64,000 nt of DNA from Magallana gigas (lineage: Eukaryota): NCBI RefSeq assembly GCF_963853765.1, contig NC_088854.1, positions 7,750,001 to 7,814,000 on the forward strand, given 5' to 3'. The translations under genes and the position numbers were made by a program. The notes beneath the pieces were generated by a model. It was not told where the DNA came from and searched no databases. It was given only the letters and a program-made list of their open reading frames with translations. Numbering within the stretch: position 1 is the first letter of the stretch; each line of letters begins with the position of its first letter. Below are positions 18,043 to 48,303 of this stretch, one piece after another.

Positions 18043-21000
18043 ATGTCAAAAAGAAGAGGAAAGACACATGATCGGGAAAGTACTAAAGGTGACATTCCAG
18101 ATACATGTATATCTGATGAAATTCCAGAAATATCTGATGATGACTCTCCAGGGACTATGAGGAAAGAAGACCCTGGCTACCTGGCTCCTTTATCTACAGA
18201 ATCAAAATCTTGGACACAAAAATTTATGCTTAAATTAACACAGGAAATAAAAGCCAATCCATTTTGGAATGATCTGAAGTTTTGGATCCTGATAGGAACT
18301 TTTCTTGCTTTTCAATTGTATGTACTGGTACAGAACTTTCTCATTTTTAAGGTTGCTCACTGCATCATGAAATATCATAAAATAATTTCTCAAATCAGCA
18401 GAAAATTACTTGATTATGATAGATAGCCATATATATATATATATATACTGTTAAAGCAAAAATATTCATTGAGGATTTAATTTCCTTAATTCCTTTGGCA
18501 GTATAAATCAACAAAATTAAATCCATGACAAATTATTTAAACCAAGTATTAATGATTACAAAGATATTACGATATGACAATATTAAATGCTAACGAAATT
18601 CTCTGGTATTAAAACAACGAAGTTTTAACCCAACGAAAATATGTGTTTCTACAGTATATAGTTTTATTTCTTTGTATAAAAGGACATATTTTCATAGATT
18701 ATTAAATCATAATATATATATATCCTTTATTTCTTTTTCCTTTAAAAAAAATGTCTCCTCACAACAAATTTTATTTATATGCTTACCTAAGCTGAAAGCT
18801 CATGCAAGTAAGCTGTTTTGATCACTGTTTTTTAGATATGTGTGTGTCCCTCTATCTGTCCTAAATAAGCTAAATTAAACAATCTATTTTTGATTTCTTC
18901 TTCAGATTTACTCATTTAACTTTAATAAACCTTAGCACTTCCATTCAAGAATGAGGCTAGCTGTTGAGAAGGGAGATAACTAAAAAAGAATGAAAATGTT
19001 ATGGGTCAACCATTAATATTTCAAAAATCTTCTCAAGAATTTAATAATCTGTCAAAAATTTTACAGACTAAAGCTAGCTTCTTGAATTTTGTTGAAATCA
19101 TGACCCCAGGAAAACCTGATGGGGTTCTAAGTTTATTATGAAAATAGATAGAAAACGTACAACTCTTAATTAAATACTTCTTGAAGGGCGATAACTCTAA
19201 AGATAAAAAATTATGCAATCTATAATTTATAGATCGGGTGAAAAAAACCCAAAAACAAATTCAACGTCCTTGGCTAGTAGAGATTTAGGACCTTTACCTT
19301 AAATCACATTGTACATGTACTTTAAATTTACTTAATTTTCAGAATGACAGTTGCATATTTTATAAATTCAATGGAGAACAAGATCACAAATTTGAAATCC
19401 TGCCAAAAAAGAATTGCAAATTCAGACAAATCTTTATCCTGTTCAGACTGTATGTGCATTGCTACGGATGGATTTTCTTCAAAAGAGTTTGAAGATGTCA
19501 TTGAGAATCAAAAGAAAGATAGAAAAAAATATCAGGAATTGGAAAAAGCAAATGTTGATTTGCTAAGTCAGTTGTCAAAATATCAGGAACAAGTAGCAGA
19601 GTTTAAAGAAACGATATCAGAGTTTAAAACAAAGTGCAGTGATGATCATGTTACTAAACTTTTTGGTATAAACTGGAAGAAGGAAAAAGATATTTTTACC
19701 AAAGAAATTGAGAAGGCAGAGACATCATATAAAGTTTCACTGGATGAAGTTCAAAGCAATGTCGAAAAAAATTCTCAAAATGTTTTCTCTCAAATAGAAA
19801 AACAACGCAAGGAAATCACTGAATTTAAAGGTATTTGCTTTTAACATTGATCTTTTCAGGGGCCTATTATGTTATGCATTTTAACAGAAGATAATGTTAG
19901 AATTAATTAAGTAAAATTCTTTGCATATTAGTGCACTTTGCACTTTGAGGGGGAAAATATAATCTTTTAAGAATTATGATGTTTTATTAAAAAGAGTTAA
20001 TTATATTAACACAAGTAATTCTTTTTTGATTTAAGAAAAAATTCAGCCAGTAGATGATTTGAAAGCACAGTTTGAAGAAAAAATGGATAAAGTCAATGAT
20101 GAATTAAACAATTTGTTAGATAAATACCAGTCATTGGAAAAAAAGCAAAAATTTGAAGAAGAGAGAATTAATTCTACTGAAAAGAAACTTGGTGGGGTAG
20201 AAAGACAACAAAATTACGTCTTCAAAGAAATCAATGACATTCGTAAGTATCAACATCAGCATGCATGATACGTTGAATATTTGTTATGAGAAATAATGAT
20301 TGGATTGTTTCAAATAATATTTCTCAAAAATGGTAGACATTGCCAGTTTAATACATTTCATTTGATAATATACAGTTATTGACTGGGTATGAGGGCAACA
20401 TATGATTTGTTGGACCTAAAGACACAAATGTCGCCGAAGGCCAAAGACAGAGGAAAACATTTCATACAAGTCTGATTTGAAATGGCAAACAGCCATTTAT
20501 GTTGCGAAGCCCTTTGGCAATTTCAAATCCTAAAGACCTGTTGAATTGAATTCGCATTCTTTTTGCTAGACTTTTTGTTACTAAAAACTATATAGAAGAA
20601 TATTTATAATGGCATATTAACTATTCTGTTTACTTGAAAGTGACCCGATCTGCAGACAGAGTCACATTTTGCATAAAAAAAATAGAATCAAGTTAAAAGA
20701 AGTGTCCTTTATATTCACGGGCATTGGAACAGGGACAGCAGAGCTGGTGGTAACCATCCCAATACCTTTGCCAAATAAAATGTACATCAAATTTGTAATG
20801 GTGATATATGCTCAATGGAGTGGCTAAAGTAATCATGGCTACTTCTGACCAATGGAACAGCTTAAAGTGTATTGAAGTAAACTATTCTGTTTATACACGT
20901 GATAGCTTTCAAAAAGCTTGCCAGACTGAACAAAATTATTCCATGGAAGCATGAATGTATCAATTTGGATATTTTATAAGAAATGGATTTAAATTTTCGC

Positions 21001-24000
21001 TGCTGATCATTTATTCATCAAAGGAGCTTGCAGATTTAGGAAGTAACTTCAGTCTTTTTTCATCGTGCATGTACATGTATGCAACTTGAAATTACATGTA
21101 AATTATTTCATTATTATGCCCCCCTTCGACCCCCCTTCGAAGAAGGGAGGGCATATTGCTTTGCTGCTGTCTGTCAGTTTGTCAGTCTGTCGTTCGGTCG
21201 GTCCACCAACAGTTTCAGTTCATTTTCTTCGCAGAGGATGAACATATTGAAATTAAATTTGGTATACAGGTTTATCATGATAATATCTAGGTTAAATTTG
21301 ATATTGGGTATGATCAGGCTATTTTCGACAGAGTTATGGCCCTTGGACATAGAAAAATTTCAGTTATTTGCAGTTTCCGCTCATTTTCTTTGCAGAGGAT
21401 GAATATATTGAAATGAAATTTAGTGTACAGGTTTATCATGATAATATCTAGCTTTAGTTTGATATTGGGTACGATCAAGATATTTCTGACAGAGTTATGG
21501 TTCTTGGATGTAGAAAAATTCCAGTTATTTGCAGTTTCCACTGATTTTCGTCGCAGAGGATGAACATATTGAAATGAAATTTAGTATACAGGTTCATCAT
21601 GATAATATCTAGGTCAAGTTCGATATTGGATACGCTTGAGCAAATTTTCGACAGAGTTATGGCTCTTGGACGTAGAAAAATTCCAGTTATTTGCAGTTTC
21701 TGTTCATTTTCTTCGCAGAGGATGAACATATTGAATGAAATTTAGTATACAGGTTCATCATGATAATATCTAGGTCAAGTTTGATATTGGTATCGCTCGA
21801 GCAATTTTGACAGAGTTATGGCTCTTGGATGTAGAAAAATTCTAGTTATTTGCAGTTTCCGCTCATATTGATAAGAAATTTAGTATACACAGACAGGTTT
21901 ATCTAATTAATATCTAGGTCAAGTTTGATTTAGGGTATGATAAAGCAATTTTCTAAAGAGTTATGCCCCTTGGACTTAAAAAAAATTCCAGTTATTTGCA
22001 GTTTACGTTCATTTTCTTTGTGGATGTTTCCAAGGGAGGGGGGCATACGTGTTTCACAAACATCTGTTGTTTCAAATTATTTTAGGAATGTATCAAATTA
22101 TTGCATGTAAGCTTGAAAACGGAAGATAAAACAGTCAAATTTAGATTGTATTAGTTTAAATAATAATAGATATTTTTAAGCTTTTGAGTCAATATGATCC
22201 CAATTCTCATGATCCCAATTTGGACTTGAACACTAATTGGCATGCAAAAACTATGAATGAGACATAATGGTGCAAAGTCCTGCTTTACTTTCCACGCAAC
22301 AGCTGAGATTTCAATCTGATGGTTTGAATGAACTCATCAATTGGCGTAGATCCATGGGGAAGATGGGGGTCAAATGAATTTTTTTGGCATTTGTTTTTAA
22401 CAACTTCATATTATATACTTTGGATCGAATGTTATCGAATTAACATACATACTTGACTAGTAATTGTTTAATGTACACTTAGTAAGTCACCCATGTGCTT
22501 TTCAGGATGAATGAAATTGCCCAATTGATAAAAAATTTGGTCAGACCATGTTTGGCGTTAGTTCTCCCGGTAAATATTCAAGCTAAATGAATATATATTT
22601 GTTTTTATCCAAACTGATGATTCTTTGTTAATGATGATAATCCAACACCAATTACACCAATAGCTCACTGTTACTTATTACATCCATTTAACATTTTCAT
22701 CAATTGTGAATTTAAATATTGGCACATTAAACATGCATCGGTTTATTTTTTTAATGAAAAATCTTGATATTGCTTGCTCCCATTGCCAGACTGTTTTGAG
22801 AAGGCAACTTTGAAACTTTAGATATGCCTGATGCATGATGTCAGGCAGCAAACACAACATGACTTGCATGTGATGACTAAAGTATAGTTAATCGGCTAAC
22901 CAATAGATGTGACTGGAGAATAATCAGGGTTCTTAGTTTGCTGCAATTTTTTTTTCTGTAAAGAAATCTTTAGTATTGAAACCAAATGTTTCCTCTTATT
23001 TTTTTTTTTTAGATTTATACATTATCCTGTTCCTTGTTGTGGTGGTGATTGCTGTCATCTTTGCATCCCAAAAACTACTGCTTTATAGACAACCTTCTCA
23101 TACAGCTGAAAGAACAGTCTACCCGGTAGAGGCAATGTCGATGAGGTCAGGTCCAAACCAGAGAGTAGGAGGACAGGAAGTGGTATGAGTGTTCTATCAC
23201 TTTGTCAGATAACTCTGCTGTTTTCAGATTCTTGAAAAAAGATAGTGTTATTTAACATAGAGTTTTTAATGTACAAAACAAGTTTGATACAAGTAGCTAC
23301 TGAGTTTTTCACTTGAGTCGACCCAGGTTGACCCAATTTGTTTTTATTTTATCAACAGTTTTCAGTAAATGTCAAATATCGTAAGTTTTTAGAAACTCCA
23401 ATATCAATTATTATCTTTTTTTCTGATCAATAACAGTAGAAAACATCTTCACGATTTAAATAATCAAATTAAGATTAGATCGTTTGATCATGCAATCACA
23501 TAAGGTCTCACTTAACACAATAAGTAACATTTTAGATATCCAGTTATATTCTTGATAGCAAGTTTTGCTAGTGGTTCAAATCTAGCTGGCAGATTGCCAG
23601 TGTGCATCTGCTTGACTATATCTAATAGGTCATTCAGTTGTGACAATCTAATGGGTTCCTCTAGATCCTTGTGTAGCATTTTACAAGAAGAAATCCAAAG
23701 ATAAGATTTTAATCAGATTGAATTTTGGGCAGATTGTTGATACCCGGTATATAGTTTATAGTTAATTGATCATGTTGAACCTAGTACTTACTATTGATAA
23801 TATGTGCTCCTTTCAGTCTCGCGCTGAACTTCTTGCAAAAGTTTCTAGCAAAAAATTGGAGAAAGGGATTGGTATTATAAGCTTTCACTCCTCTACTCAG
23901 GAGTTCCATCAGAACCTTTTGAGAGTAGTTCCTAAACCCCATTCTCTGCCTATGCAGGTAATGAAATAGATATTTTACATGTTTGTTCGGTGGATTTTCA

Positions 24001-27000
24001 ATGCTAATTTTTTTCAAATTAAACTGTTCTTTGAAAATAATTACGTTTTACAGACCTATCTGATTGAAAAACAAGAGGATTTACTGAAAGTAAAGCCATA
24101 CAAGGTAACCATTGTTTTTGTGGACTTCAACGAAAGAAACATTATTCTGGAAAATCCTGACACTGAGGTTGGAGATTGTAGGAGACTAACAACAGAGATT
24201 TTTCTTTCGAGTAAATGTAAGTCTTCAGTATAACTATCTTGAACTAAGACTGATTCTCAACTTACCATACCAAAAGTATTAGGTGTCTATCTGACCTTTT
24301 GTCTATCATCAGGATCTGTAAATTTTTCTGTCTATTCAACTTTTTCTTCAGAACCACAAAGGACTATATATGGTATGGGCCTAAAATGGCCCCCTAAAAG
24401 GAATATCATTATTTTACTGTAATTCTTTGTTTTCTTTGTACAGATATATATGTCGTGTTTTAACTTAATGTTCATTTTGATTCAAGTGCCCACAATTTAG
24501 AAATACGGCATTGTAAAGACAGCCTGTCCCCGCTATTTTTGCATTTTAGCATAAAAAAGCTTGTTTTCAAGAAGTTTTTCTTTCAGGAAACATAGAGCGC
24601 ATGCTTGAACCAACACATTATTTTAATCAGAGATGAATCTAGCCAAGACTAATAAGTGACAAATATTTTGTCCTGGTTCAAGCATGCGCTCTATATTTCC
24701 CATTCGTAAAAAGATGTGAAAAATGTCAATTTCGACTGATTTTGATTGAATGTTTGAAATAGCGTCACTTCTGACGTCATATACTGCAAGTGAGTGCAAA
24801 TAAATCAAACAAATAAGTGAAAAATATATTTTATATGAACTCTTCTAAATTATAACATAACATTTTATTGTAACCGAAATACTTTAAAAAATGGTGAATT
24901 ATGGGGGCCAAATTCAACTCTTATCATATATAGTTCTTTCAACCAAACTTGGCAGAAAACATCTATTGATGAAAAGTTGTATTTGTGAAAATAGACTTTT
25001 GTTACCATATTGTCAAGTGCATTTGGAATTAAATTTAATTAGAAAATATGTGCTTGAAATTAATGAGAGAGTATCCAAGTGTCTCCAGAGTCAGTACACT
25101 CTTTGTTAATTCATATAAGGTATAACATTTTTCCCTAAAAAAAACCCCTATTATAATTAAGAAGATAACTGACATACTAATGGTACAAGAACAAGCATGC
25201 TACAATTTGTATTATTTGAATGCAAACATCATGCTGTTGTTTACATGTAAGTTTGAGACCAGTAATAATTAAAGTTGTATTTGAGGCAAGATAGTATAGA
25301 TAGGGATGCAAATAAGAAAAATAAATTACTCATTATTCAAATGAGGTATTGGTCTCTTGTTATTTACTCATTATTCAAGTGAGGTATGTGCCTCTTGTTA
25401 TTATAATTGCTTTGCTATAGTTAGGTGTTGGCTCACCAAGATGAAGGCAGGGAGAGCTTTTGGTATACCCTTGGTGTTGGGGTCCTGTTAATTTTTTTTA
25501 AGCAAGCTCTTATATAAGTTATTACTGGTTCTAACGTTACCAGACTCGCATGGATGGTGCATCTGGGCATACTTAAGGACTAAATAGAATTGGATGCTTA
25601 ATCTGAGTCATGAACTTCAGATGCTGGAGGAGGTAAGTTTTTTGGAGCAGGTTAAAGTTTTTGGAACAGGTGCCCTTTGATGGCGGCATATGTAAATTAT
25701 TGCTGGACCAGGTTCTTTCTTCACAAAACATAGTTACATGGATGGTACATCTTATGATACTGATCAACCTGGGGCTTCAATGCTGAATCTGAGCCTTAGG
25801 TTTTGGATGCTTGAGGAAATTTTGGTTTTTGGAGAAGGTTAAAGTCTTTGATGACCATATCTTAGTTATAACTGGTCTTATTTCAGGGAATGTGGATGGA
25901 TGATGCATCTTGTAATACTAATGTTCTTGACAGGCTTGGATTCTAAATCTTACACAGTTTAGGATGCTGATGCTAAAGTTTTTGGAGTAGGTCACATATC
26001 ATGGAAAACTTATTCAAACTTGCATGGTTGATTTATCTATGTGAACGAATTAAAGATCTAGCATAAAATACAGACAGTGATCTTGATTGGTTTAAGATTT
26101 TAGAGCAACTCAAAGTGTATTAGAATCTTGGAGATGGTTACATATTGAAGTAAATCCTGATTATACCCCATTCAGATGTGTACAGTTTATGATATAAATC
26201 TGATCTTGATTATAAAGGATGTTAAGAAAACGTGGTCCTTCAGACTCCTTCCTCAATTCAAAATTGCTTTATAGATGTGATTGTTGATATATTATAATAT
26301 CTTATAATTATAATACATCATATTTAGTTATTTAAGGAATGAATTTAATCTAATTTTTAACTATGTTATATGATTTAACACAATTTGGGCAGTTTTGGCT
26401 TTTTTAACCACAAAGCGATTTATAAAAAAAGCGTAAACTGTCCCAACTTATGTTATACTTGTATAACATAGTTTGAAATTAAATTTATTCCTTATGATTT
26501 AATTTTCTACTACTAAAATCAGAAGAAATTTACATTTTCCAGTGCCTTTGCCTGTGATAACACTACGTATTGATTTTGTACTATATAACCCATAACTTCA
26601 AATGACGCCAAATTGAGGCGCCAGTGGGGTTTGCTTATTTATATTTAAATATTTAATCGTACGATGGCTTAAAATTATATAAATATAAGTAATAAGGAAT
26701 CATTCTTAGAATTTTATGAGGTGATAATTTCAGTTGGGGGTGATCAAATATATCCCAAAGCCCTTCGGGCTTTATTGGATCTGATCATGCCCCAACCAAA
26801 ATTATCACCTCATAATACTCAAAGAATGATTATACCTCATTTGGGTCAGCTCTGTTTTCTTTGATTATAGTGTACATACTAGTGTTTTTTTGGTGATAAA
26901 TTAAAATAAAGCATACTTTTGTTTGTTTAGGTGATGTGTTTGTGGTTTACTGCAAAGATAGAGACTCCCAGTCTCTGCCACCAAATCAACTTTACAACAC

Positions 27001-27130
27001 CAAGCTGCATTCAGTTAAACAGCAGCCAATACTGTCCAAACTGAGTAAAGAAAACAGAGTGTTCTCTGTTAATAAAGCTTTACTTCCCCAACAAGCACAG
27101 CTTTTGGAGAACTGTTTCAAACTACTGTAA
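18043..27130 (+). CDS. Uncharacterised 2TM coiled-coil protein with C-terminal alpha/beta (TIR/SEFIR-like?) domain, paralogue 1, ~547 aa
   Basis: Exons 18043-18317, 19343-19830, 20036-20242, 23013-23182, 23817-23957, 24054-24216 and 26931-27130 total 1644 nt in frame. TM1 is FWILIGTFLAFQLMTVAYFI, TM2 is LYIILFLVVVVIAVIFAS, and the core motif is VFVDFNERNIILENPDTEVGD...CDVFVVY. Confidence 0.85.
18446..18656. mobile_element. Possible TA-flanked MITE (TACTGT...ACAGTA) in paralogue 1 intron 1
   Basis: Short inverted termini next to a (TA)n run. Confidence 0.4.
21112..22053 (+). mobile_element. Helentron/HINE-like non-autonomous element with ~5 internal 161-bp tandem repeats
   Basis: 5' TTATGCCCCCC...GGGAGGGCAT hairpin, (GTCT/GTCA)n microsatellite, units starting at about 21221, 21382, 21543, 21705 and 21864, and 3' GGGGGGCATACG. 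This layout is known for bivalve satellite-bearing Helitron-related elements. Confidence 0.8.
24365..24932. mobile_element. ~570-bp TA-flanked MITE in paralogue 1 intron 6
   Basis: Imperfect ~30-bp TIRs: TATATGGTATGGGCCTAAAATGGCCCCC and GGGGGCCAAATTCAACTCTTATCATATA. Confidence 0.65.
26332..26840. mobile_element. Hairpin-bearing non-autonomous element (possibly Crypton-like)
   Basis: Long imperfect palindrome (~26690-26835) centred on AAAGCCCTTCGGGCTTT (26757-26773), plus a second inverted repeat at ~26332-26495. Confidence 0.55.
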
Positions 27131-28940: not shown

Positions 28941-29448
28941 TCTAAATTATCACCTGTCGTTCGATATAAATTATGAGGGAAATATGAAGATTTATTCCTC
29001 CATGAAAAATCATATTTCCCGGGGCAAAATATGTTTTTTTATTAGATATAAATCTTCATATTTCCGTCACAATTATGCTAAGAAATATATGATATTGCTA
29101 TGCAAGCATACTAAGATAGTGTTAAACCCTGACTCCCTAAACAATACTGGGGCCTCGAGAGGGTTCACGGTTCAATATAGAAATGTACGTGTATTAGGAA
29201 AATGTTTTAAAAAAACAAACCAATACTACAATTTGTGATATGTAATTTTTTTCAAACCGTGACCCCCCAGGCTAATACTGGAACCCTAAGAGAGTTTAAA
29301 GTTCAGTATATATAAAGAGATACAGGGAAAATGTTTTAAAATCTTTTTTTAAGAAACACAGTGCTAAGCTTAGTTACATTAAGTGAACTTTGTAAGCATC
29401 CTCATATCCTTATCTCATAATATCAAGGTCACAGCAACCCCTTTCATT

Positions 29449-30320
29449 TTTATACCCCCCGCAAACAAAGTTTGGGGGGTATATAGGAATCACCCTGTCC
29501 GTCTGTCTGTGCAATCGTGTCCGGTCCATATCTTTCTTATGGAGAAACATTGGAAGTTCTTACTTCACACAAAGATTGCTGATGACCTAAGGGTGTGTCA
29601 TGACCTTGACCCAAGGTCATTCAGGCAAGGTCAAGGTCACTGGCAGAAAAAATGCAAAATTCGTGTCCAGTCCATATCTTTCTTATGGAGAAACATTGGA
29701 GGTTCTTACTTCACACAAAGATTGCTTATGACCTAAGGGTGTGTCATGACCATCACGTAAGGTCATTCAGGCAAGGTCAAGGTCACTGGCAGAAAAAATG
29801 CAAAATTCGTGTCCGGTCCATATCTTTCTTATAGAGAAACATTGACATTGGAAGATCCTACTTCGCACAAAGATTGCTTATGACCTAAGGGTGTGTAATG
29901 ACCTTGACCCAAGGTCATTCGTGCAAGTTCAAGGTCACTGGCAGAAAAAATCCAAAATTTGTGTCCGGTCCATATCTTTCTTATGGAGAAATATTGGAAG
30001 TTTTTACTTCACACAAAGATTGCTTATGACTTTAGGGTGTGTCATGACCTTGACCCAAGGTCATTTGTGCAAGGTCAAGGTCACTGGCAGAAAAAATGCA
30101 AAATTCGTGTCCGGTCCATATCTTCCTTATGGAGAAGCATTGAATGTTCTTACTTCACATAAATATTGCTTATGACGTTAGGGTGTGTCTTGACCTTGAC
30201 CCAAGGTCAATTGAGGAAGTTCAAGGTCATTGTTTCGAAAATGCTAAATTTTGTCTGTGCCATTTCTTGTATTAATGGAAATATTAGAAGCTAAAATTTG
30301 ACACAAAGCTTGCTCTTCTC
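29449..30320 (+). mobile_element. Helentron/HINE-like element with ~5 internal 146-bp tandem repeats
   Basis: 5' TTTTATACCCCCGCAAACAAAGTTTGGGGGGTATA hairpin, (GTCT)n, and units at 29515, 29661, 29807, 29959 and 30105. A likely 3' end (GCGGGGGGTATC..GCTCACAGT..TCTAGTT) lies at ~31120-31155. Confidence 0.8.
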
Positions 30321-33201: not shown

Positions 33202-33458
33202 ATGAGGGGAAACAGAGGGAAATCTAGAAGTAGCAGCTCTGTACCAAATGAATCCAAGAAAAGTCCAACGACTTCCACTCATAAAAATAGCCCTGACGAC
33301 TGGTCTTCTTCAGCCCCAAAATCAGAGGCTTCGACAGAAAACAAATCTCAACGAATAGACATAAAACCTCTGGGAAAACTACCTGACGGATTTCTAAATG
33401 AGCAGAAGTTTTATATCCAATTGGTAGTCTTACTGGTTTTGCAACTGTATGTATTCAC

Positions 33459-33501
<43 letters not shown>

Positions 33502-36500
33502 ATGAATATATCTCTTTATTTTAACTAAAGGTAAATCTAAACTAAAGCTTGTTTAAAAGCAACTAATTTGTCTTCGGATACAACTGTAAGTCAGACAGGA
33601 CCGACTTTATGCCATGCATGATATATATACATGTTCTAGCGATTCATGCAAAATGTGTCAGTCCTTCATAGGAAAAAGGCATTTGCATATGCTAGAAAAC
33701 TTTTGACTTGAAAGGGAAATGGCCATGAAGTAAAAACTGTCAAATAGTTTTTCTTTCAATGCTTCACATATATGTTTATAATAGTTACCTAACATTCAAA
33801 ACTCAAGTTATGAGCGAGATAAAGAGCTCAAAATGGTTTGTACAAGTTTAAGATTTTTGAGAGAAGTCACAATGTCGACAAAAAAGCAAACGCACACAAC
33901 AAACAAGACACGTTTAAGCCATTTTGGTAAATAAAAGTAAACATGTAGTGACCTTGGAATGACCATGCATGGGAGCCGCGTAGCATCTAATCGACTTGTG
34001 TGAGGATAGCATGAATCCCTGCAGAACCCTAGGATTTACATCTTATCATTTGTTTTTCAGAATAACAGTTCCGATAGTAAATCTTTTAATGAAAAGCGAC
34101 AACGTGGAAAAATGTATTGAAACTGTTGAAAGGAAACTTTATCCTAGACAAGAGAAATTCTTCGAATTAGATAAAAAGTTTACTGTGACAGAAAACAAAT
34201 TGTCAGAGCTGGAAAAACTGCTCCACGAGAACTATTTCACTGGACTGTTAGATAAGGAATGGGAGAAGAGGAAAGTATTATTGACAAAAGAATTAGAAAA
34301 GAAACACGCTATTTTGAATGATATTGTGGATAACGAGCTGAAAAACGTTTATGAAAAGATCACAGATGTATTTCAACAGATTACCACTCATAAAAAAGAA
34401 TTTGATGATAAACTCAACGAGAGAGGTAATTCATTTATAAAATGTGACTAAATACGTTGTGAGGTTACTCGCAATTAACTTTGCTTAAAAAACTGTATAA
34501 GCTTACTTATTTCATATTACATATAACTTTACATCATGTCAATGAGCTTTGATTGCTATATTTTGTTCGACATCATAATAAGAATTTTTTAGCCGAAGAG
34601 CGACTACAATAGATTGCATATAGCAATGACAAAGCCTATTGATATGGTGTACTTTCTGTAACTACCATTATGACTCCAGACCAATGACAAATTGTCTCAC
34701 ATTCCAGGAGTTAATCAAAGATTAGCAAAGTAATATAGAATTGGAAGGAATAAAATCTTCTGAATAACATTTTAACAATTTTTGATATTGTAATACATGA
34801 AAGTGTCCTGATAAAGTAAAAATGCTATATTGTTAAAACCATTTTCAATCTATAGTCCTTTGAAGTAGTGCATCGTTTTACATGTACAGTGTATATAGGA
34901 ACAAACTTAGTGGAGGTAAAACTTTTCAACAATTTCCTCTTTAAAATATCAATCTTGCAATAAGTGATATAAAATATCATCATGATAATGTGTAGTGTAA
35001 AGTTTATCGATTGAGTCCCATGTGTTGCAATAAGTGATATATAATATCATCATGATAATGTGTAGTGTAAAGTTTATCGATTGAGTCCCATGTGTTGCAA
35101 TAAGTGATATATAATATCACCATGATAATGTGTAGTGTAAAGTTTATCGATTGAGTCCCATGTGTTGGTATTTGATATATAATATCATCATGATAATGTG
35201 TAGTGTAAAGTTTATCGATTGAGTCCCATGTGTTGGTATTTGATATATAATATCATCATGATAATGTGTAGTGTAAAGTTTATCGATTGAGTCCCATGTG
35301 TTGGCATTTGATATATAATATCATCATGATAATGTGTAGTGTAAAGTGTATCGATTGAGTCCCATGTGTTGGCATTTGATATATAATATCATCATGATAA
35401 TGTGTCGTGTAAAGTTTATCGATTGAGTCCCATGTGTTGGCATTTGATATAAGAGAGGTGGATGGTCTCAGCTATGTATAAAGAAATGCATGTAGGAACA
35501 TTTTCAAATTTTAATGATAAAATGTATTATATTTAAAAGCTAACGACAGAATTGATGGTTAATTAGACGAACACACAGGCTCTTTGATATCTCTTTCATA
35601 ATGTGCTTATAAAAACGGGATCAAAAGAAAAAAAGGCTATTCATATTTGAAACAAATATTGATGCATCACTTAATGGTAAACCTGAAAAACAATAGTACC
35701 CGGTATTTACGGTAAATTTCATGTGATAAGAGGGGATGTAACTTTTGTATAAAATGGCAAAATTACTTTATACAGTACTATTCAATTGAATTATATTACC
35801 GCTAATGAAGTATTACTTGATGCGTTGTCGATTGATGATCTGATATTGTACACTCCCGCAGCTGTGCCATTTGGAGTTCTATAATTAAAAAAATTGCCCC
35901 TTCTTTTGTTGATCATATGTAAAAATCTTAGAAAATATCCACCTTATACTAAATGTCAAATATATTTATGATATACTTACTTATTTGATTACCAGTAAAC
36001 ATACATGTATATGTTATCGGAAATAAGTATATCTAATGAATTAAAATGTGTTTTCTCAATTCTTTTAGAGGTACTTTTGAAAGGCAATATGGAAGTCACA
36101 CTTGAGGAGGAAATAAAAAATGTAACTCAAAAAATGAAAAATAAACATTCAAATTTGACTAAAATAGTCGAAGATATAGAATACAGACTTGCTGAAGTTA
36201 AAGAGCAGATGGAATCTTTCTCGGTCGACATGAGAAGTGCAATGGAAACAATTTATAAGGAAGTTAAAGGAAAGCAATCAGAAATGGAGACGAAAATAAA
36301 ATTGAATGAAGGTACTCTTGAAATAGTAAATGAAAGGATGTATTGTTTCTCCAACAAAACTAAAGTATTAAGGAGGGAGACAGAAAGATTGGATGCGAGT
36401 TCTTCAAAACTTAACAGAAAAATGAAATCTAATGAAAAGAAAATTATTGAAATCAATAGACAATTATATTTTAACTCCAAAAAAGTTAACGACCAAATAA

Positions 36501-39500
36501 AACATTTGGAGAATAATACAGAAGAGAGACTAGATGGAGTAGATGGGATGTTCAATGTTACCAACGAGAGACTAGATGGAGTAGATGGAATGTTCAATGC
36601 TACCAACGAGAGACTAGATGAAGTAGATGGTATGTTCAATGCTACCAACGAGAGACTAGATGGAGTAGACAGGCTGTTCAATGTTTTCACCTCTGATCTT
36701 TACGACATTAGTAAGTTTTGACTCAACAAGTAAACAATATGCTATTACGTATTCGTTTTCCCAGTTTGAGATATTGAGAAACTTTGAATAATTGATACCT
36801 ACTTTGTTTTACTGGTATGCGAGATTAAATTGATAAAAGGTTACAGGGAACACATGGTTTTTGATTTTAAAACAAATGTGTTCATTGCAGGGTTTCTTAT
36901 TTCAAAGGAGGGCTATAACTTGTTTTTTGGGGTTTTTTAAAAATAATTTCTTTTAAATTCCTCCATTTATACTTCCTTTTTTGGTTGGGTTATATTTATT
37001 CTTCCATCAATAAAATATGATGTATTTTGAATTTATAAACCATTTGGTTTGTTGTTGTGTTTTTTAAAAGAAACGAAATTCCTTCTGTGCTGTTTTCCCT
37101 TATAACTTTTTATGTTTTTTTTAATCGAGCTTAATTAACTGTCTCTAAAGGATATTTTGATGATACTTCTTAAATAAGTATATACCTATACATCGAAGAT
37201 TTTAAGATTTAAAAAAATCCCCATGCGTTTTCCATTTTAATTATGAATGTGTGAAAATTTTCAACTTGTTTCTTCTTTTTTTTTTTATTTCAAATATTAT
37301 TTAAAAATATGTTTTGATAAATAATAACAAAGTTTATTTATTTACAAAAATAATTTTTATATAGAATATTAAGTCTTATTGAACTGTAATATATGCTATA
37401 CTTAATGGTCTATCAACAAATGTCTTTGTAAAATATCTTTTCATTGCCAATATTTTAAAACCGTCATTCATTATTTTCTTAATATAACTTTAAAAAAATC
37501 TTGTTCCCATACCTTTATTTTATTATACTCATTTATATTTAATTTTCCTCTTGTTATTGTTTTACAAATATTAATTAAAACAATTAAAGTCTATATGGTG
37601 TATTGGCCATTATTATCCAGCTGCATACTTCAGTTTGATTGATGGTGTCTTTTTTCTCACGCGAATTTTTTAATATGCGTTATACTTATTACCTATACAC
37701 TTTTTTGTTTAACAAATACATGTTAAGACACTTTGAGTGCCGAGTATTTTTTGTTTTGTGATACTAGAACTTTTGTTTGTTTGTTGGGTTTTTGTGTGTG
37801 TTGAAACCACGACTAATTTTCAATTTAAGTCAAGTTACGGTATTATTTATCAAAAGCAATAATAAGAAACCATGTTAATAGATAAGTTTAGTCCAATGTT
37901 AGAATGCTGAAAACTGTATATTAATTGTTCTTTTTTATATATCCTGCTGATTTTAAACTTAGGTTTATACATTGTTGTGTTGCTATTTGCGGTGGTATTT
38001 GCTGTTTTCCTTGCTGCCTATGAAAAATTGGTATCAAAACAACTTCGGACTGTTGATAGTGCAGCGCCTGCAGAAGTTACGAAAGGCCACATGTTGGAGT
38101 CTGGACGAAACAAAAGATTAAAGAAAGAAGATACGGTATAAAAATTGTATTTTATACATGAACACCAACAACGTATAGCAGAATAGCTGCATCACAATTC
38201 TAGTTTAAGCAGATATATTTTCAAAATGTTGCAACACTTTAAAGAAGCAGCTTACTAGTATTTTACAGAACATATATTCAATTCAAACAGAAAAATAATT
38301 TCTATGGTATCAGTATAAAAAAAGAGTACAGCTCTTAGCTAGCCTAGTTGCTATTATAAATGTGCAAACTTCATTAATCATTACCTTTTTTTATCAAAAC
38401 ATCATTAGACTACTACATATATTCTAACATTAAAAATGATCTATTGTTTTGATTTCTTTTTTATATTTTGACATCCGATCTTCTTCGTTTGTGACATTGA
38501 TAGTAGCAATTTAACTCGAATTTTTCTAAGCTCATTGTCAAACGAATAATACATTGATGTCAATTACTAACGAATTACTGAAAGCTTGTATTTAGAAGCA
38601 ATAGTTAGACTGATAAGTTCATTCTAACAGCTATAATCCAACTTTATTTGCATGTTTTCAAAGAAATAAAATACATTATATGTTAAAACAAATAAGAATA
38701 AGGGGAATTTGTCATATCATATTTATGATCATATTCTTTGATAAGTTTTGGTGTTTAATATAAGGATTTTTACTGCTAACAATTTAACAAAAAGTAAATT
38801 ATAAAAAAAAAACAAATCAATACAAGGAATGTGTATTGTGTTGATTAAATGTAGAGTGCTAAGGCAAATTATTAAATATATAAATTAAAGGTTTTCAAAT
38901 AGTAAACTTTAGGAAGTAAAAGGACTTTCCTATAATTGTATTTTTCTCACACTTATCAGTCGGTTATACAGTTTTCCAGTGCTCTTATTGAGAAACTATC
39001 ACGAAAAAACAAGGAAAAAGGAGTTGGTATTATCAGTTTTAATTCGTCAACTCAAGAAAATCACAAGAGGTCTTTTGAAGCAATTGATATACCCTCATCT
39101 TTGCCAGTTCAAGTAAGAGTAGTGAATAAATTGCATTTGTTATTTGATTTCTAAAAAGTTTGCATTTACTGATTTAGTCAATTTTTAAATTTTAATGTTG
39201 AATTTCATACATTTTACAGGCCTATGTTATTTTAAAATTAGATGACCTAATGCTCGTGCAACCTTACACGAAAATGTTTATTTTTGTTGACTTCAATGAA
39301 AGAAACATTATTCTTGAAAACTCCGAAACTGAAATTGGAGACATCAGGAGACGAACCACTGAAGTCTTACTCGAAGTAGGGTGTAAGTATTTGGATAAAA
39401 AAGGAACTTGGAACAGTTGTTATAATTGGCCGTTATTAATATTATGTTTTCTTTAATTTTACTATCAATTTATTTTGGGGGAGCAAAACAAAACTTGCTT

Positions 39501-39702
39501 ACATTTTCTTTCAGGTGATGTCTTTGTCGTCTACTACAGAGATAAAAATTCTAAATTTTTGCCAAAAGAAAACCTTTACAGCACCAGTCTATATTCCATT
39601 GAAAAGCAGACAGTACTCTCCAGATTAAGAAGCAGAGGCAGAGTGTTCTCTGTTTATGATACTTTCCATCCTCAGCAAATTCAAATATTGAATACTGCCT
39701 AA
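33202..39702 (+). CDS. Uncharacterised 2TM coiled-coil protein with C-terminal alpha/beta domain, paralogue 2, ~638 aa
   Basis: Exons 33202-33446, 34061-34425, 36069-36710, 37963-38135, 38972-39112, 39220-39382 and 39515-39702 total 1917 nt, with the same intron phases as paralogue 1. TM1 is FYIQLVVLLVLQLITVPIVNLL, TM2 is LYIVVLLFAVVFAVFLAAY, and the motif is IFVDFNERNIILENSETEIGD...CDVFVVY. Confidence 0.85.
33459..33500. repeat. (ATCT)n microsatellite, about 10 units, just after the paralogue 2 exon 1 donor
   Basis: Read directly. Confidence 0.95.
34955..35451. repeat. 68-70-bp minisatellite x7 in paralogue 2 intron 2
   Basis: Units start at 34955, 35025, 35095, 35165, 35233, 35301 and 35369, with core CATGATAATGTGTAGTGTAAAGTTTATCGATTGAGTCCCATGTG. 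Confidence 0.95.
36524..36691 (+). repeat. Coding 42-bp (14-aa) tandem repeat x4 in the paralogue 2 ectodomain
   Basis: ERLDGVDGMFNVTN / ERLDGVDGMFNATN / ERLDEVDGMFNATN / ERLDGVDRLFNVFT. Confidence 0.95.
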
Positions 39703-43332: not shown

Positions 43333-46300
43333 ATGGCGCAAAACACATCCGACAATTCGGAATGTTTGGCAGAATCATGGCGTATAGAAGCTTTAGAGGG
43401 GAAAACGGAAAAAACTGAGGATATAGCACGAGATGTTGATTCGAGAAAATGTCAGAATACTTCGACGCAAGAAACTTTATCAAATTCAAATATTTCTGGA
43501 AAAACATCCGATCCAGAGGACTTTTTAGTGCAAACGCACCATTTATCGTTGCAAACAGACAAAACATATGAACTTCAAGAACAGTCGGAAAAAGAATCCG
43601 TTAATTTAAACGAATTCCAAAATGAACCTTTGAAAAATCCAAACTTTCAATCAGAAAAAACAAGAGATGATTCAGCACATTTAATACGTGAAAAATTAAT
43701 GACAAAATTAGAGGATTCAAATTATTCTTCAGAAACATGCCATCCAGAAGTGCCATCAGAACATTTAGCGTATCATACAGATGAAACATCTGAGGAAAAA
43801 TATGAAGAAAAATCAGAAAATATAAAAACATTACAAGATAACGTTCCAGATTTGAAATTAAATCACCCATCCCAGAATTTGAGGGACCCATCAGAAGTAA
43901 TTTCTCGTGATTTAAAGCATAACTTTCCAGAGACAAAGACACATGGGGATACCGGTATAACCGTTGCCCATGGTGAATTCAAACCTTCAGAACCAACAGA
44001 TAACACCACCACTGAAAAGCAAACGCAGTCTGTTGAAACAACAAAGACAGTGTCTTCCTATGGACTCTTGATTCTGACAACGATCTTAATACTTGTTCAT
44101 TTGTATGTATTTTTTGCCTTTTTTATAAACCAATCTTAAGCGTTGAAGCTATTTTTTATTTTCCTAACGAAAAATCATGGTTTATGTTAGGTTACATAAA
44201 CCAAAGTCTCAAGCTTTTCTGATTAAAATGTGCTGCTAAAATTACCTTCGTCAAGGGATCTTCTCGATTAAGAATACACAAATCGATGTACCAATATTGT
44301 CAACACTTTAAAAAAGCCGAGAAAAACACATCATGAATTTAATAATTTCATTATCTATTTTTCATTTGCTTTCTACTTTCAGATTTACGATTGTTTTTAT
44401 CTACAGTCGATTGACAGGGGATAATAAAATAACAACCGAAAATCTTTTAAACAAAGATAATACACATCCTGTAATTCAAATGAATGAAACCTGCGAGAGG
44501 ATATTAAAAGAAATGCAAGAAGAGTTTGAGAAAACACAGACCATTACTGAAGATCATTTAAAAGAGGAGCGCAAGGAAATCACTGAAATGAGAGGTATTC
44601 TTGTTTTTAAAAAAAAAAGTTTCTTACAAAAATTTATTGTGTTTCACATTTATATCAGTTATTCGTCTTAGGAGTTTGATTTTTCAAACACAAATTCAAC
44701 ATCACTGTTTACATTAATCAATAAACAAAATGAGTACTCATTCTGCATCTAATTTAAATTCTATTTTAAAAGGACAATTATGAACACGTCTCAGCTGCCG
44801 GATGTGGATATCATTCTGTTGTAATGAAACTTTATGTCAATACCTTATCTTAACATGCTGATACTTCTTAATCACTTGAACAATTAAATGGTTCTTTAGT
44901 GTTCCATGTGGGTATGAAGGTAGCTAGCATTGCAGAAGAATTACTTGCTTCACGTTAGAATTAATAAAAGCATAAGGCGTATAATTAGCAGGTAAAAACG
45001 AATCATATAATGATGCAACATCATCAGAACACGAATGGTATTAAAATAAAACATCTTTACTTTTAAATTCTTAGTTTTTATGGTTATAAAAACAGCATTA
45101 ATTTTGCTTTGATTTATTTAGAAATAAACAAAAAGACTAATTTTGTATACAACTCCTGTCATTTAAGCATTGAATGCTGATGTTTGGATACTAGTATCAT
45201 TGGTTCTATATAACACACCGAGGCTGTGAATACAAATTGAATATAATTTGTCTGTACATCATTGTTGTGTTATACGATCGACTACATCGAAAAATAAGTA
45301 TCCAATACAGTGTACTTATATTTATATTCACATTGATGTGAATTTGTATGAAGTATTTGTGTATCGTCGCTTTAAAGCCTTTATATACGCTCTGGGTCAG
45401 GGATATGAAACATAAATAGAGCAGTAATTTGAGCATGTTTATTTAGTTCGCATCCGCGACTAAAAATATAGTGCCAAAAACTTTGTAGAAAAAATCTTTT
45501 TATTTAACTAATAGATATGAGTTAATGGTTATTTTTTATGGGAACATATCAAATTGGTTCTGTAAGTTTGAACGTTTAATTTGTTCTCACAATAATGAAT
45601 ATACTCATAACACGTTATGACATTTATATTTGTGCTCATGGCGCATGAATAGGAAAAAATGAATTCACAGGAAATTGAACTTTGCATATTTCAATTCTAA
45701 TGCAATCATTCAGTCGCACTGAATGTAAATATTACTATATCTACAAGCAGAATTTACAATGCGGTTGCTTCGAATCATATATGTACAAGCTTCTTAATGT
45801 TAAATAGTTTACGATAGGTTTAGGATACAATATAAATGGTATTGTGAGGCCTGGTAAGTAATTACCTCATTTCTTATTTATCTCAAGGAGTTTGCCAATT
45901 TAAGAAAAGTTGAAATATCTTTATCAATTCTAGGAAAAATTCAGTTTTTGGAGGGTATTCAATCAAAACTGCAAGTCCAAATGGATACTCTGGAGAAAAG
46001 CTGCAAAGCAATGGAAGAAAAATATTCGGAAATCAAAACTAATATTATGAGTTCCGAAATTAATTTCAAGAAAGAAATATACGATATCAGTAAGCATTCT
46101 TTCTGAAAATAGTCTTTATTACTTGAAGGAACCCAATTTGTGGGTGCTGTATGCATGGTAAACAGTCCATCCATCCGTACGCTCGTCTTATATTTTCTAT
46201 TTTAAAAAAACTGCATGAACTAATTTACTGTAGGAATCTTTCCTCTTTTGAAATTATAATTTCTGTAGTATGTGTATAAAAATTTCACAGATCTTTCAAA

Positions 46301-48303
46301 ATATCCTGTAGAAAATTATTTTTCGAAAGGAAATTATTATTTTCATTATCATTTATAAAATTTAAAAGGTGAAAATCTTGCCTGACAGGTGAGATACACC
46401 AATTACAAATAAATGTACAATCAAATATTATATTTAATATTTATCTATCTTTCAAAAGTAAGTTGATATCTGCAGAATTGTATCATTTTGTTGACAATAA
46501 ACAGTCGATTTGATATTCTTGAACATCTTATAAGAACAAGAAACTCAGTATGATTGTTTTCTTTGGCAGATTTATACATAATACTGTTTCTGATTTTGAT
46601 GATAATCGCTGTCATCTTTATGGCCCAAAAGGAACTGCTACATAGAAAATATCATGAGTCTGATCATGGCCAAAAACAAAAAGTTGGAGGACAGGAAACC
46701 GTATGAATAAAGCTACAATTACTACACGGAACAACTGATAAAAACTGTATAATTTTATGTCTCAGTTCTGGTCCTTCTTTAGTAGTTCTCTTTGAAACGG
46801 TTGTTGTTGTTTTTTAGGCTTTTTCAGAAGAACGCTTTGTGATGAGTATGTCACAAAAAGTTAAAGAAAATGGAATAAGTCTTATCAGCTTTAGTTCATT
46901 AACTCAGAATTTCCACAAGGAAATACTGAAACAAGTTTTGGAACCAAAAGCTTTGCCGTTACATGTAAGTTATTTATGTACTTCAGTTTCTTTTGCTTAT
47001 CTACATTAACGCTTAGATTGATATTAAAATAAAGATTGTATTACAGACATGCGTGGTTGGAACTTTAAACGATTTGTTCAATATTAAGCCATACCAGGTA
47101 ACGATTATCTTCGTGGACTCCAATGATAGAGACGTTATTCTGGAAAACCCAGAGACTGACATTGGAGATCTTAGGAGAAAAACTACCGAATGTCTATCGA
47201 AAATAAATTGTAAGTCTTATAAACAGTACGTTCATGAAGAAATAAATGATGAAAACAATAAACCATTTTCGATCGCTGAATTGATATTAAGTTGGTACCA
47301 GTATTTTACTTTCAAAAAACAACAACTGATTTTGAATAGACCATATCAATGTTTAACAAGGTCTTGTAGATCTCTTGGCGACGATTTCAGCTCGTACATA
47401 TTTTTTTCTTTTGTTCACATTTTATACACTTTAGTTGGTGCAAGAGGAACTACTGTGTAGCAGATATTGCATTGCAGAAATTTTAAAGCTTATTTGCTCT
47501 TTTGTTTTGAAATATCAATGTGCTTTTTTAGAAGGGAAAAACATACATTCATTGCAACATTTAAACATTTCAAAAGATTCAACAAGTAATGATACTGTTC
47601 TCAGTGTTATTTTGAAAAGTTGATTCTGGGAACGGAACGTTCATGAATATGAAAAATGTGGCAGAAAAAACCAAAGAAGGGAAAATTCCTCAAAATTTTA
47701 AATCCGATAACGATTGATTGTCCTCGAATTACTGCATGTTGCCTTATTCAAGGTAAACAGTAAATGTGTAAGCACTTCAACGATGGCAATATTGTAAGCT
47801 TTCAAATGTTTTAGTCATTTAAGGATCACGTGGTTAAATTTGACTTTATCAGATTCACTGTCAAAATTGCAGAAAAAACCTCTTTCGTGGTTATAGTACA
47901 TTTTTCACAATTTGGGATCTTGTAGTCAATATTTAAATTTGACTTTTGTTGATATTTAAAAAGAATTCATCAGTAATCGGTGTATTAAAAATGATTGGTT
48001 TGTGTTGACTTTTCGTTATTGCTTGGAATGTGCTTGTTCTTTGTTATCAAATTTAGAGAAGAGACTGATATTTCTAATCTTTCTTCTTGTTTACTAGGCG
48101 ATGTCTTTTTGATCTATTGCAAAAACAAAGGGTCCCGGTCTTTGCCTAAAGATGAATTATACAATACCAGTCTACAATCAATTAATCAAAGGCCAATGCT
48201 GTCTACACTGAGTAATCAAAACAGGGTATTATCTGTGTATGACACCTTCCATCCCCAGCAAGTGAAGCTCTTGGAGGATCGCTTTAAACAGCTGGGATCC
48301 TAA
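43333..48303 (+). CDS. Uncharacterised 2TM coiled-coil protein with C-terminal alpha/beta domain, paralogue 3 (long acidic N-terminal tail), ~594 aa
   Basis: Exons 43333-44102, 44383-44594, 45934-46089, 46570-46700, 46818-46964, 47047-47209 and 48098-48303 total 1785 nt. TM1 is YGLLILTTILILVHLFTIVFIY, TM2 is LYIILFLILMIIAVIFMA, and the motif is IFVDSNDRDVILENPETDIGD...CDVFLIY. Confidence 0.85.

What the first reader, a model, noticed from the sequence alone, without database searches (positions are those of the whole stretch)
23817..27130. Conserved C-terminal domain has a five-strand alpha/beta pattern with a TIR-like first strand and a candidate catalytic Glu
Seen in all four copies: b1 G(I/V)(G/S)(I/L/V)(I/V)SF, helix (TQEFHQNLL), b2, short helix, b3 (I/V)FVD, invariant N-x-R-x-(I/V)ILE(N/D)-x-x-x-(E/D)-(I/V)G, helix RRLTTEIF / RRRTTEVL / RRKTTECL / RGQTVDAI, b4 CDVF(V/L)(V/I)Y, LY..L.S, b5 RV(F/L)S, and a final helix. 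Established knowledge: TIR domains are b5/a5 flavodoxin-like folds starting with an FISY/FISH-type strand, and TIR NADases use a Glu in helix aC. SEFIR, receiver and nucleoside-deoxyribosyltransferase domains share related topology. Inference: IISFHSSTQEF resembles TIR strand A and helix A, and the TTE Glu sits where helix aC would be. Canonical WCxxE and BB-loop motifs are absent, so this would be a divergent or new family.
Basis: inference. Interest (0 to 1): 0.75.

Follow-up and report, generated by a model that had tools for sequence, protein, structure and literature searches.

The report
Orphan flavodoxin-like tail domain, oyster
Four neighbouring Pacific oyster genes encode membrane proteins with a long outer coiled coil and a confidently modelled inner five-strand alpha/beta domain found only in molluscs; it resembles TIR only in general fold, and the Glu proposed as catalytic is not conserved.

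Summary
The window is Magallana (Crassostrea) gigas DNA. It carries four tandem + strand paralogues whose last three exons encode a ~165-residue domain. The introns are GT-AG, lie at the same positions in all four copies, and are confirmed by RNA contigs for copy 2.

- Pfam, a profile search of all PDB sequences, and profile-profile comparison with oyster TIR (probability 2.3%) and SEFIR (0.6%) find no kinship.
- The 'TTE' Glu is Glu in only 8 of 50 family members.
- The invariant acid is instead the Glu of N-E-R-N-I-I-L-E, in the beta3-alpha3 loop.

The family is unnamed. All 30 or so looked-up members are molluscan, and the oyster genome has at least 15 genes in tandem clusters.

The architecture is N-tail, TM1 or a signal-like segment, a sequon-rich coiled coil, TM2, then the domain, so the domain is probably cytoplasmic.

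Best reading: a new flavodoxin-fold output module of a mollusc-specific surface protein family. Its biochemical function is unknown.

The parts
23817..23957 (+). Copy 1, domain exon A: N-terminal helix, beta1 (GIGIISF), alpha1 and the start of beta2
   Evidence: Acceptor cag| and donor |gtaatg; translation
24054..24216 (+). Copy 1, domain exon B: beta2/alpha2, beta3 (IVFVD), the loop N-E-R-N-I-I-L-E, and alpha3 (RRLTTE). It ends in phase 1.
   Evidence: The best genome match of the exon-B profile is here.
24150..24152 (+). Codon of the family-invariant Glu (the ILE Glu; E85 of model 1)
   Evidence: 50 of 50 sequences have Glu; position
24195..24197 (+).
   Evidence: Column composition is Q18 E8 R8 D5 K5
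26931..27130 (+). Copy 1, domain exon C: beta4 (CDVFVVY), the conserved loop L..LY..L.S, alpha4, beta5 (RVFS), alpha5 and the stop codon
23009..23182 (+). Copy 1, exon with the second transmembrane helix and the linker (...QRVGGQEVV)
   Evidence: ORF; tblastn with P0008/P0109
18037..27130 (+). Gene 1, approximate span: N-tail plus TM1 exon 18037-18318, coiled-coil exons 19344-19832 and about 20017-20250, TM2 exon, then the domain exons
33202..39702 (+). Gene 2 (= P0106, XP_065930869.1). Exons: 33202-33447, 34062-34423, 36067-36710, 37963-38135 (TM2), 38972-39112 (A), 39220-39382 (B), 39515-39702 (C)
   Evidence: tblastn at 100% identity; RNA joints
43333..48303 (+). Gene 3: N-tail plus TM1 exon 43333-44139, and domain exons A 46818-46964, B 47047-47209, C 48098-48303
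51243..57178 (+). Gene 4 (= P0004, XP_065930873.1): signal-like exon 51243-51293, coiled coil plus TM about 54500-55774, and domain exons A 55980-56105, B 56517-56685, C 56961-57178
   Evidence: model 2 was built on this protein

Best explanation
The stretch encodes the C-terminal domain of the first of four tandem paralogous Pacific oyster genes.

Each protein has this order of parts:
- a basic N-terminal tail;
- a first hydrophobic helix (a signal-like segment in copy 4);
- a 200-350-residue coiled coil rich in N-x-S/T sequons;
- a second transmembrane helix and a short linker;
- a ~165-residue domain with a (beta/alpha)5 flavodoxin-like fold.

The domain belongs to a family that has no Pfam model and no name. 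The family was found only in molluscs (bivalves and gastropods).

Shown: the four copies, their splicing and expression, purifying selection, the fold, the conservation pattern, and the absence of any detectable sequence relationship to TIR, SEFIR or any solved protein.

Inferred:
- The coiled coil faces outward and the domain is cytoplasmic.
- The domain is the intracellular output module of a lineage-specific, tandemly expanded surface protein family, probably a receptor and possibly immune.
- Its working surface is the C-terminal edge of the sheet. The conserved polar residues lie there or nearby: D76, N78, R80, invariant E85, Y113, D116, S119, S152, Q161 and H36 (model 1 numbering).
- If there is a catalytic or ligand-binding acid, it is the ILE Glu and not the TTE Glu.
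- Clustering of the domains through the oligomeric coiled coil would be the trigger, as in TIR, SEFIR and death-fold signalling. In that sense it may work like a TIR without being a demonstrable member of that family.
For: - Four copies with shared exon structure.
- Spliced RNA contigs for copy 2 in 3 RNA runs from 2 studies.
- dN/dS about 0.3.
- 102 homologues found by HMMER over 1.84 billion proteins. All 30 or so looked up are molluscan and carry no informative name.
- At least 15 genes in clusters on contigs C2, C6 and C9 of this genome.
- AF2 models with pLDDT 94 / pTM 0.90 and pLDDT 90 / pTM 0.88, both showing five beta-alpha units.
- Invariant residues are F28, I83, E85 and L127. Near-invariant residues include V75, D76, G92, T98, Y113, S152 and Q161.
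- Topology: 1.85 sequons per 100 aa in the coiled coil against 0.35 in the domain; net positive charge after the last TM in most members; signal-like N-termini in P0004, P0054 and P0097.
Against: - No experiment bears on function.
- Topology rests on sequence statistics only.
- I could not read model coordinates. Whether the conserved residues form one pocket, and what E85 overlays in a TIR, a GTPase or a receiver, is therefore not shown.
- The exhaustive sequence search used only the 54-residue exon-B profile. Remote non-molluscan relatives may have been missed. Foldseek does find amphioxus, coral and sea-urchin proteins at TM 0.58-0.66.
- An immune role is conjecture, based on tandem expansion and architecture.
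- The conserved N/R/E network could be purely structural, holding the 17-residue beta3-alpha3 loop in place.
Confidence: 0.55

Rival explanations
1. It is a true but extremely divergent member of the TIR/STIR superfamily. It would act either as an NAD+-cleaving enzyme or as a homotypic adaptor.
For: - A cytoplasmic position behind a transmembrane helix, on an oligomerizing ectodomain, is what a TIR would have.
- beta1 ends in S-F, like the TIR (F/I)S(F/Y/H) strand.
- alpha3 carrying TTE is topologically where alpha-C lies.
Against: - No Pfam TIR, TIR_2 or SEFIR match for 50 members even at E<=10.
- No PDB sequence match at E<=10.
- hhalign probability is 2.3% against oyster TIRs and 0.6% against SEFIR. 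The only aligned segment puts TIR beta-A on this domain's beta4.
- The TTE Glu is Glu in 8 of 50 members.
- There is no BB-loop-length insert between beta2 and alpha2, and no WCxxE.
- GTPase-like folds score as high or higher.
Confidence: 0.18
2. It is a degenerate P-loop GTPase-like domain (a pseudo-GTPase of the IRGQ/EngB kind). It would have lost nucleotide binding and would serve as a protein-binding module.
For: - Motif positions loosely recall the G3, G4 and G5 motifs: hhhhD at the end of beta3, hhY.(R/K)D after beta4, and a conserved Ser at beta5.
Against: - There is no GxxxxGK(S/T) after beta1. That loop is variable apart from F28.
- The domain has five strands, each followed by a helix, rather than the six-stranded mixed sheet of G domains.
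- No Pfam or PDB sequence match.
Confidence: 0.12
3. It is a receiver-like or other small-molecule enzyme domain, in which the Asp at the C-terminal end of beta3 (D76) is the reactive residue.
For: - D76 (D45/E5 across the family) sits where the CheY phospho-acceptor Asp sits.
Against: - The acidic pair after beta1 is replaced by an invariant Phe.
- There is no conserved Lys after beta5.
- Canonical two-component receiver domains are not known in animals (established knowledge).
- No Response_reg match.
Confidence: 0.06
4. The genes are ordinary cytoskeletal coiled-coil proteins, as their automatic names suggest (myosin heavy chain-like, paramyosin-like), and the C-terminal region is just a structural cap.
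For: The database names of the homologues. Only coiled-coil Pfam families match, and most below their curated cut-offs.
Against: - The coiled coil is flanked by one or two transmembrane helices, and some members have signal-like N-termini.
- The globular domain is the best-conserved part of the protein.
- There is no myosin motor or any other cytoskeletal domain.
Confidence: 0.03

Closest known systems
TIR domain (for example plant RPS4/RRS1, PDB 4c6t; TIRAP; IL-1RAcPb; SARM1)
   Different: No sequence or profile similarity (hhalign 2.3%). There is no BB loop, no box motifs, and no conserved alpha-C Glu. The invariant Glu lies in the beta3-alpha3 loop.
GTPase-like domains (EngB 2cxx, EngA 2dyk) and the pseudo-GTPase IRGQ (8q6q)
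   Different: This domain has no P-loop and no NKxD motif. It has five strands rather than six, and there is no sequence match.
CheY-like receiver domains and flavodoxins
   Different: This domain lacks the receiver acid pocket and Lys, and it lacks the flavodoxin FMN phosphate loop.
SEFIR domain (IL-17 receptors, Act1)
   Same: It is a cytoplasmic signalling domain of the same fold class. A Trichoplax SEFIR protein appears at TM 0.50 in AFDB.
   Different: hhalign probability is 0.6% against the oyster's own SEFIR domains, and there is no Pfam match.
Tetherin/BST-2 (architecture only; from my own knowledge, not tested here)
   Same: Both have an extracellular coiled coil anchored to the membrane at both ends, plus a short basic cytoplasmic N-tail.
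   Different: Tetherin's second anchor is GPI and it has no globular cytoplasmic domain. No homology is implied.

Membership tests
TIR (Pfam PF01582 / PF13676) | Match to the family profile | tested here: not met
   No TIR family hit for the exons, for full-length homologues, or for 50 isolated domains at E<=10. hhalign against 13 oyster TIR domains gives probability 2.3%. No PDB sequence hit at E<=10.
TIR (Pfam PF01582 / PF13676) | Flavodoxin-like fold with five beta-alpha units | tested here: met
TIR (Pfam PF01582 / PF13676) | Conserved catalytic Glu in helix alpha-C (in NADase TIRs) | tested here: not met
   The alpha3 'TTE' Glu column is Q18 E8 R8 D5 K5 across 50 members.
TIR (Pfam PF01582 / PF13676) | BB loop between beta-B and alpha-B; box 1/2/3 motifs | tested here: not met
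   The beta2-alpha2 connection is about 3 residues and alpha2 is 6 residues long. No motif was aligned by hhalign.
TIR (Pfam PF01582 / PF13676) | Structural match that stands above other fold families | tested here: inconclusive
TIR (Pfam PF01582 / PF13676) | NAD+ hydrolase activity or homotypic assembly | not testable with these tools
   The homodimer prediction gave no verdict. It counts neither for nor against.
SEFIR (PF08357) | Match to the family profile | tested here: not met
   No Pfam hit. hhalign against 4 oyster SEFIR domains gives probability 0.6%.
P-loop GTPase | Walker A / G1 motif GxxxxGK(S/T) after beta1 | tested here: not met
   The loop after beta1 is F-x-x-x-(T/S), variable apart from F28, with no conserved Gly or Lys.
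CheY-like receiver | Acidic pair after beta1, Asp at the end of beta3, Thr/Ser after beta4, Lys after beta5 | tested here: not met
   Only the beta3 Asp (D76) is present. beta1 ends in an invariant Phe and beta5 in Ser.
Flavodoxin | FMN phosphate-binding loop (T/S)-x-T-G-x-T after beta1 | tested here: not met
   No such conserved loop and no Pfam Flavodoxin match.

The most novel reading that the evidence does not exclude
The domain is a previously unrecognized class of animal cytoplasmic signalling or effector module. It would be TIR-like in fold and in proximity-triggered logic, but independent in sequence. It would use the invariant loop Glu (N-E-R-N-I-I-L-E) with D76 to bind or turn over a small molecule. 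It would couple a doubly anchored, glycosylated extracellular coiled-coil sensor to an intracellular response, in a mollusc-specific, tandemly expanding (possibly immune) receptor family.
Probability: 0.2. Interest if true: 0.8.

Novelty: new variant of a known kind. Interest (0 to 1): 0.5.

Why it matters
Molluscs lack adaptive immunity and rely on greatly expanded receptor families. Most known output domains in such families are TIR, death-fold or SEFIR.

This is a conserved, confidently modelled cytoplasmic domain with no family assignment. It sits on at least 15 tandemly clustered oyster membrane proteins and on homologues across bivalves and gastropods. That makes it a concrete candidate for a new signalling output.

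The work also corrects the target for mutagenesis. The residue to test is the invariant ILE Glu (with D76), not the TTE Glu. It also shows that the automatic names of these genes ('myosin heavy chain-like', 'paramyosin-like') are misleading.

If the domain proves to be merely structural, the finding is an ordinary lineage-specific orphan domain.

Tried and rejected
1. My first idea was that IISF..TQ / FVD..ILE / RRxTTE are decayed SF1-helicase motifs V-VI (the RecA2 half). Neither fold search lists helicases near the top, so I dropped it.
2. A weak Pfam hit of copy 1 exon B to KH_PARP14_6 (E 0.037, 14.6 bits against a cut-off of 27). It was not seen in other copies or in 50 members, so I treat it as chance.
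3. Profile comparison with oyster TIR and SEFIR domains: no similarity.
4. Profile search of all PDB chain sequences at E<=10: nothing.
5. Foldseek against PDB and Swiss-Prot models: only weak generic hits (PAF-AH/SGNH, TRAPPC10/11, FprA), TM below 0.5.
6. Homodimer prediction of the domain: score 0.02, no verdict. It is not evidence either way.
7. ESM Atlas feature search pointed to chordate clusters partly carrying DUF4630 (scores 0.80-0.89, a lead only). DUF4630 does not match any family member and is absent from the oyster genome. Rejected.
8. Literature: no paper mentions the available gene or protein identifiers or DUF4630. The Biomphalaria PTC2 transmembrane clusters are described as lacking homologues outside gastropods and as having no known domains (PMC7494358). 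No link could be made.
9. The search for homologous proteins with the Mya arenaria member returned only itself.
10. The linker motif (R/K)(V/L/I)GG between TM2 and the domain occurs in only 5 of 49 members. It is not a family feature.
11. The search of earlier findings returned only this same stretch.
Full report
WHAT IS THERE. The window is AT-rich eukaryotic DNA (GC about 0.30-0.37). It lies at G000:C2:7750001-7814000 of a 564-Mb, 29-contig assembly. Proteins identical to its exons are annotated as Magallana (Crassostrea) gigas, on a contig of the same length as C2.

Each copy is split into three exons with canonical GT-AG introns at identical positions. The first intron is in phase 0. The second is in phase 1 and splits the Cys codon before DVF. 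The given coordinates, 23817-27130, are exactly these three exons in copy 1.

For copy 2, RNA contigs from three RNA runs of two studies contain the joints 34423>36067, 36710>37963, 38134>38971, 39112>39220 and 39382>39515. The gene is therefore transcribed and spliced as modelled.

Pairwise amino-acid identity of the four domains is 35-52%. Synonymous sites are saturated (dS >1) and dN/dS is about 0.3. The only slip is that the first Gly of the beta1 pattern is Ser in copy 4.

THE PROTEINS. An exhaustive HMMER search of 1.84 billion proteins with the exon-B profile found 102 proteins, 43 of them below 1e-10. All 30 or so that I looked up are molluscan.
- Bivalves: Magallana/Crassostrea, Saccostrea, Ostrea, Mytilus, Mercenaria, Mya, Mactra, Solemya, Sinanodonta.
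- Gastropods: Haliotis and Batillaria. Foldseek adds what, from its accession and LOC number, I take to be a Biomphalaria protein (the organism column is blank).

They are named 'uncharacterized', or carry coiled-coil-driven names such as 'myosin heavy chain-like'. P0106 is the window's gene 2 and P0004 is gene 4.

Full-length members share one plan:
- a basic N-tail;
- a hydrophobic helix, or a signal-like segment at the N-terminus in P0004, P0054 and P0097;
- a long coiled coil;
- a second transmembrane helix and a linker;
- the ~165-residue domain at the C-terminus.

Pfam sees only coiled-coil noise and nothing over the domain. The oyster genome holds at least 15 genes with this domain, in tandem clusters: C2 at 7.77-7.81 Mb (this window), 51.64 Mb and 52.24-52.33 Mb; C6 at 39.76-39.86 Mb; and C9 at 31.46 Mb.

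TOPOLOGY (inferred). N-x-S/T sequons are five times denser in the inter-TM coiled coil (1.85 per 100 aa) than in the domain (0.35 per 100 aa). The residues after the last TM are net positive in most members, and those before it are neutral or acidic. Three members start with a signal-like segment. Together this places the coiled coil outside and the domain in the cytoplasm.

THE FOLD. I ran AlphaFold2 on a 50-sequence alignment (A3). The first sequence was P0002:446-615, which is 90% identical to window copy 2. The model has pLDDT 94 and pTM 0.90. Its elements in order are helix 2-16, beta 20-27, helix 30-41, beta 51-55, helix 59-64, beta 68-76, a 17-residue ordered loop, helix 94-105, beta 108-114, a 19-residue loop, helices 134-146, beta 150-153 and helix 159-169.

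A second model, built on the window-encoded copy 4 (P0004:338-509), has pLDDT 90.4 and pTM 0.88 and gives the same order.

WHAT IT RESEMBLES.
- Foldseek against PDB gives nothing below E 1e-3 and no TM above 0.5. The hits are PAF-AH/SGNH, FprA flavodoxin domains and TRAPPC11, with RPS4 TIR at rank 22. Swiss-Prot models give the same picture.
- The same search of model 2 gives IRGQ 9.5, RPS4/RRS1 TIR 9.4 (133 of 141 residues), EngA 9.1, TIRAP 8.5 and a CheY-like protein 8.7.

AFDB clusters and the ESM Atlas return molluscan relatives (TM 0.82-0.87). After those come uncharacterized proteins that, judged from their accessions and LOC numbers, are from amphioxus, coral and sea urchin (TM 0.58-0.66; the organism column is blank), and a SEFIR protein I take to be from Trichoplax at TM 0.50.

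SEQUENCE TESTS OF MEMBERSHIP.
- No Pfam family recurs among 50 isolated domains at E<=10.
- The family profile hits no PDB chain sequence at E<=10.
- I built a profile of 13 intronless TLR TIR domains from this same genome and one of 4 SEFIR domains.
- hhalign against the family gives probabilities of 2.3% and 0.6%. The only aligned segment is the trivial DVFVVY against the TIR/SEFIR first strand.
- The G1 motif of GTPases, the receiver acid pocket and Lys, and the flavodoxin phosphate loop are all absent.

CONSERVATION AND THE GLU. Across 50 members, down to 22% identity, the invariant residues are F28 (end of beta1), I83, E85 and L127. The near-invariant residues are H36, F74, V75, D76, N78, R80, L84, G92, T98, Y113, D116, S119, L122, Y128, L132, L141, L144, R149, S152 and Q161.

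However, its column is Q18/E8/R8/D5/K5, and it varies even among oyster proteins (TTQ in P0012, P0015 and P0019). The invariant acid is E85 of N-E-R-N-I-I-L-E (codon 24150-24152), in the ordered loop between beta3 and alpha3.

By secondary-structure position, D76, Y113 and S152 end strands 3, 4 and 5, and F28 directly follows beta1. This is the edge of the sheet where doubly wound alpha/beta proteins usually place their functional sites (established knowledge). I could not read coordinates, so whether these residues form one pocket is inference.

MECHANISM. The most likely reading (0.55) is a new cytoplasmic output domain of a mollusc-specific, tandemly expanding surface coiled-coil protein family. 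It would work like TIR or SEFIR, in that oligomerization of the ectodomain would bring the domains together. It is not a demonstrable member of those families. Its functional site would centre on E85 and D76.

Rivals:
- a true but very divergent TIR (0.18);
- a degenerate GTPase-like domain (0.12);
- a receiver-like or other enzyme using D76 (0.06);
- a plain cytoskeletal protein (0.03).

A homodimer prediction gave no verdict and counts for nothing.

NOVELTY. No Pfam model, no solved relative by sequence, no informative database name, and no paper citing the identifiers I could find. The fold class is known but the family and the architecture are not described. I file it as a new variant of a known kind. 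Interest is moderate: the domain is real, conserved and well modelled, but its function is open and the specific TIR/NADase claim did not survive.

Noticed in passing
window 58655-59032 (-): An exon encoding a prefoldin subunit (Pfam Prefoldin_2, E 4.5e-12), downstream of gene 4 on the opposite strand.
   Followed up: partly
window 13213-14277 (+): A 354-aa open frame rich in Lys, Arg, Ser and Glu, with no Pfam match, upstream of gene 1. It may belong to a separate gene.
   Followed up: partly
window 51236-51694 and 52936-53310: A minisatellite that reads as repeated MLKYQHV/MLKYHHV units in open frames on both strands. It lies inside the long first intron of gene 4.
   Followed up: no
window 29383-29736 and 29891-30175 (+): Two similar open frames (shared ...DLDPRSF.QGQGHWQKK.KI.V.SISFLWRNIG...FTQRLLMT) between genes 1 and 2. 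They look like a repeated or mobile element. No Pfam match for the first.
   Followed up: partly
window 36517-36700 (+), gene 2 coiled-coil exon: About four tandem 13-residue repeats (NERLDGVDGMFN[VA]T), each carrying an N-x-T sequon. The ectodomain appears to vary by repeat units, and P0002 from an older assembly has a slightly different set.
   Followed up: no
window 19344-19844 (+), gene 1: A Cys-rich motif (...CSDCMCIATDGFSS...) just after TM1. It is shared with P0008 and P0015 and is consistent with an extracellular, disulfide-bonded segment.
   Followed up: no
window 23009-23182 (+); also P0008, P0010, P0012, P0015, P0027: A linker motif (R/K)VGG between TM2 and the domain, present in 5 of 49 family members and also in window gene 1, so it is confined to a subfamily. 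Its meaning is unknown.
   Followed up: partly
G000 C2:51.64 Mb, C2:52.24-52.33 Mb, C6:39.76-39.86 Mb, C9:31.46 Mb (L001-L003): More distant paralogues of the same domain, in further tandem clusters. They keep the FVD..NER.IILE motif and have no TTE motif in alpha3; the two read (L002, L003) show no Glu in its place.
   Followed up: partly
P0002 versus P0106 (window gene 2): The older C. gigas reference protein differs from the window-encoded one by about 10% of residues within the domain. RNA contigs also show many SNPs. This points to high allelic or strain polymorphism.
   Followed up: no
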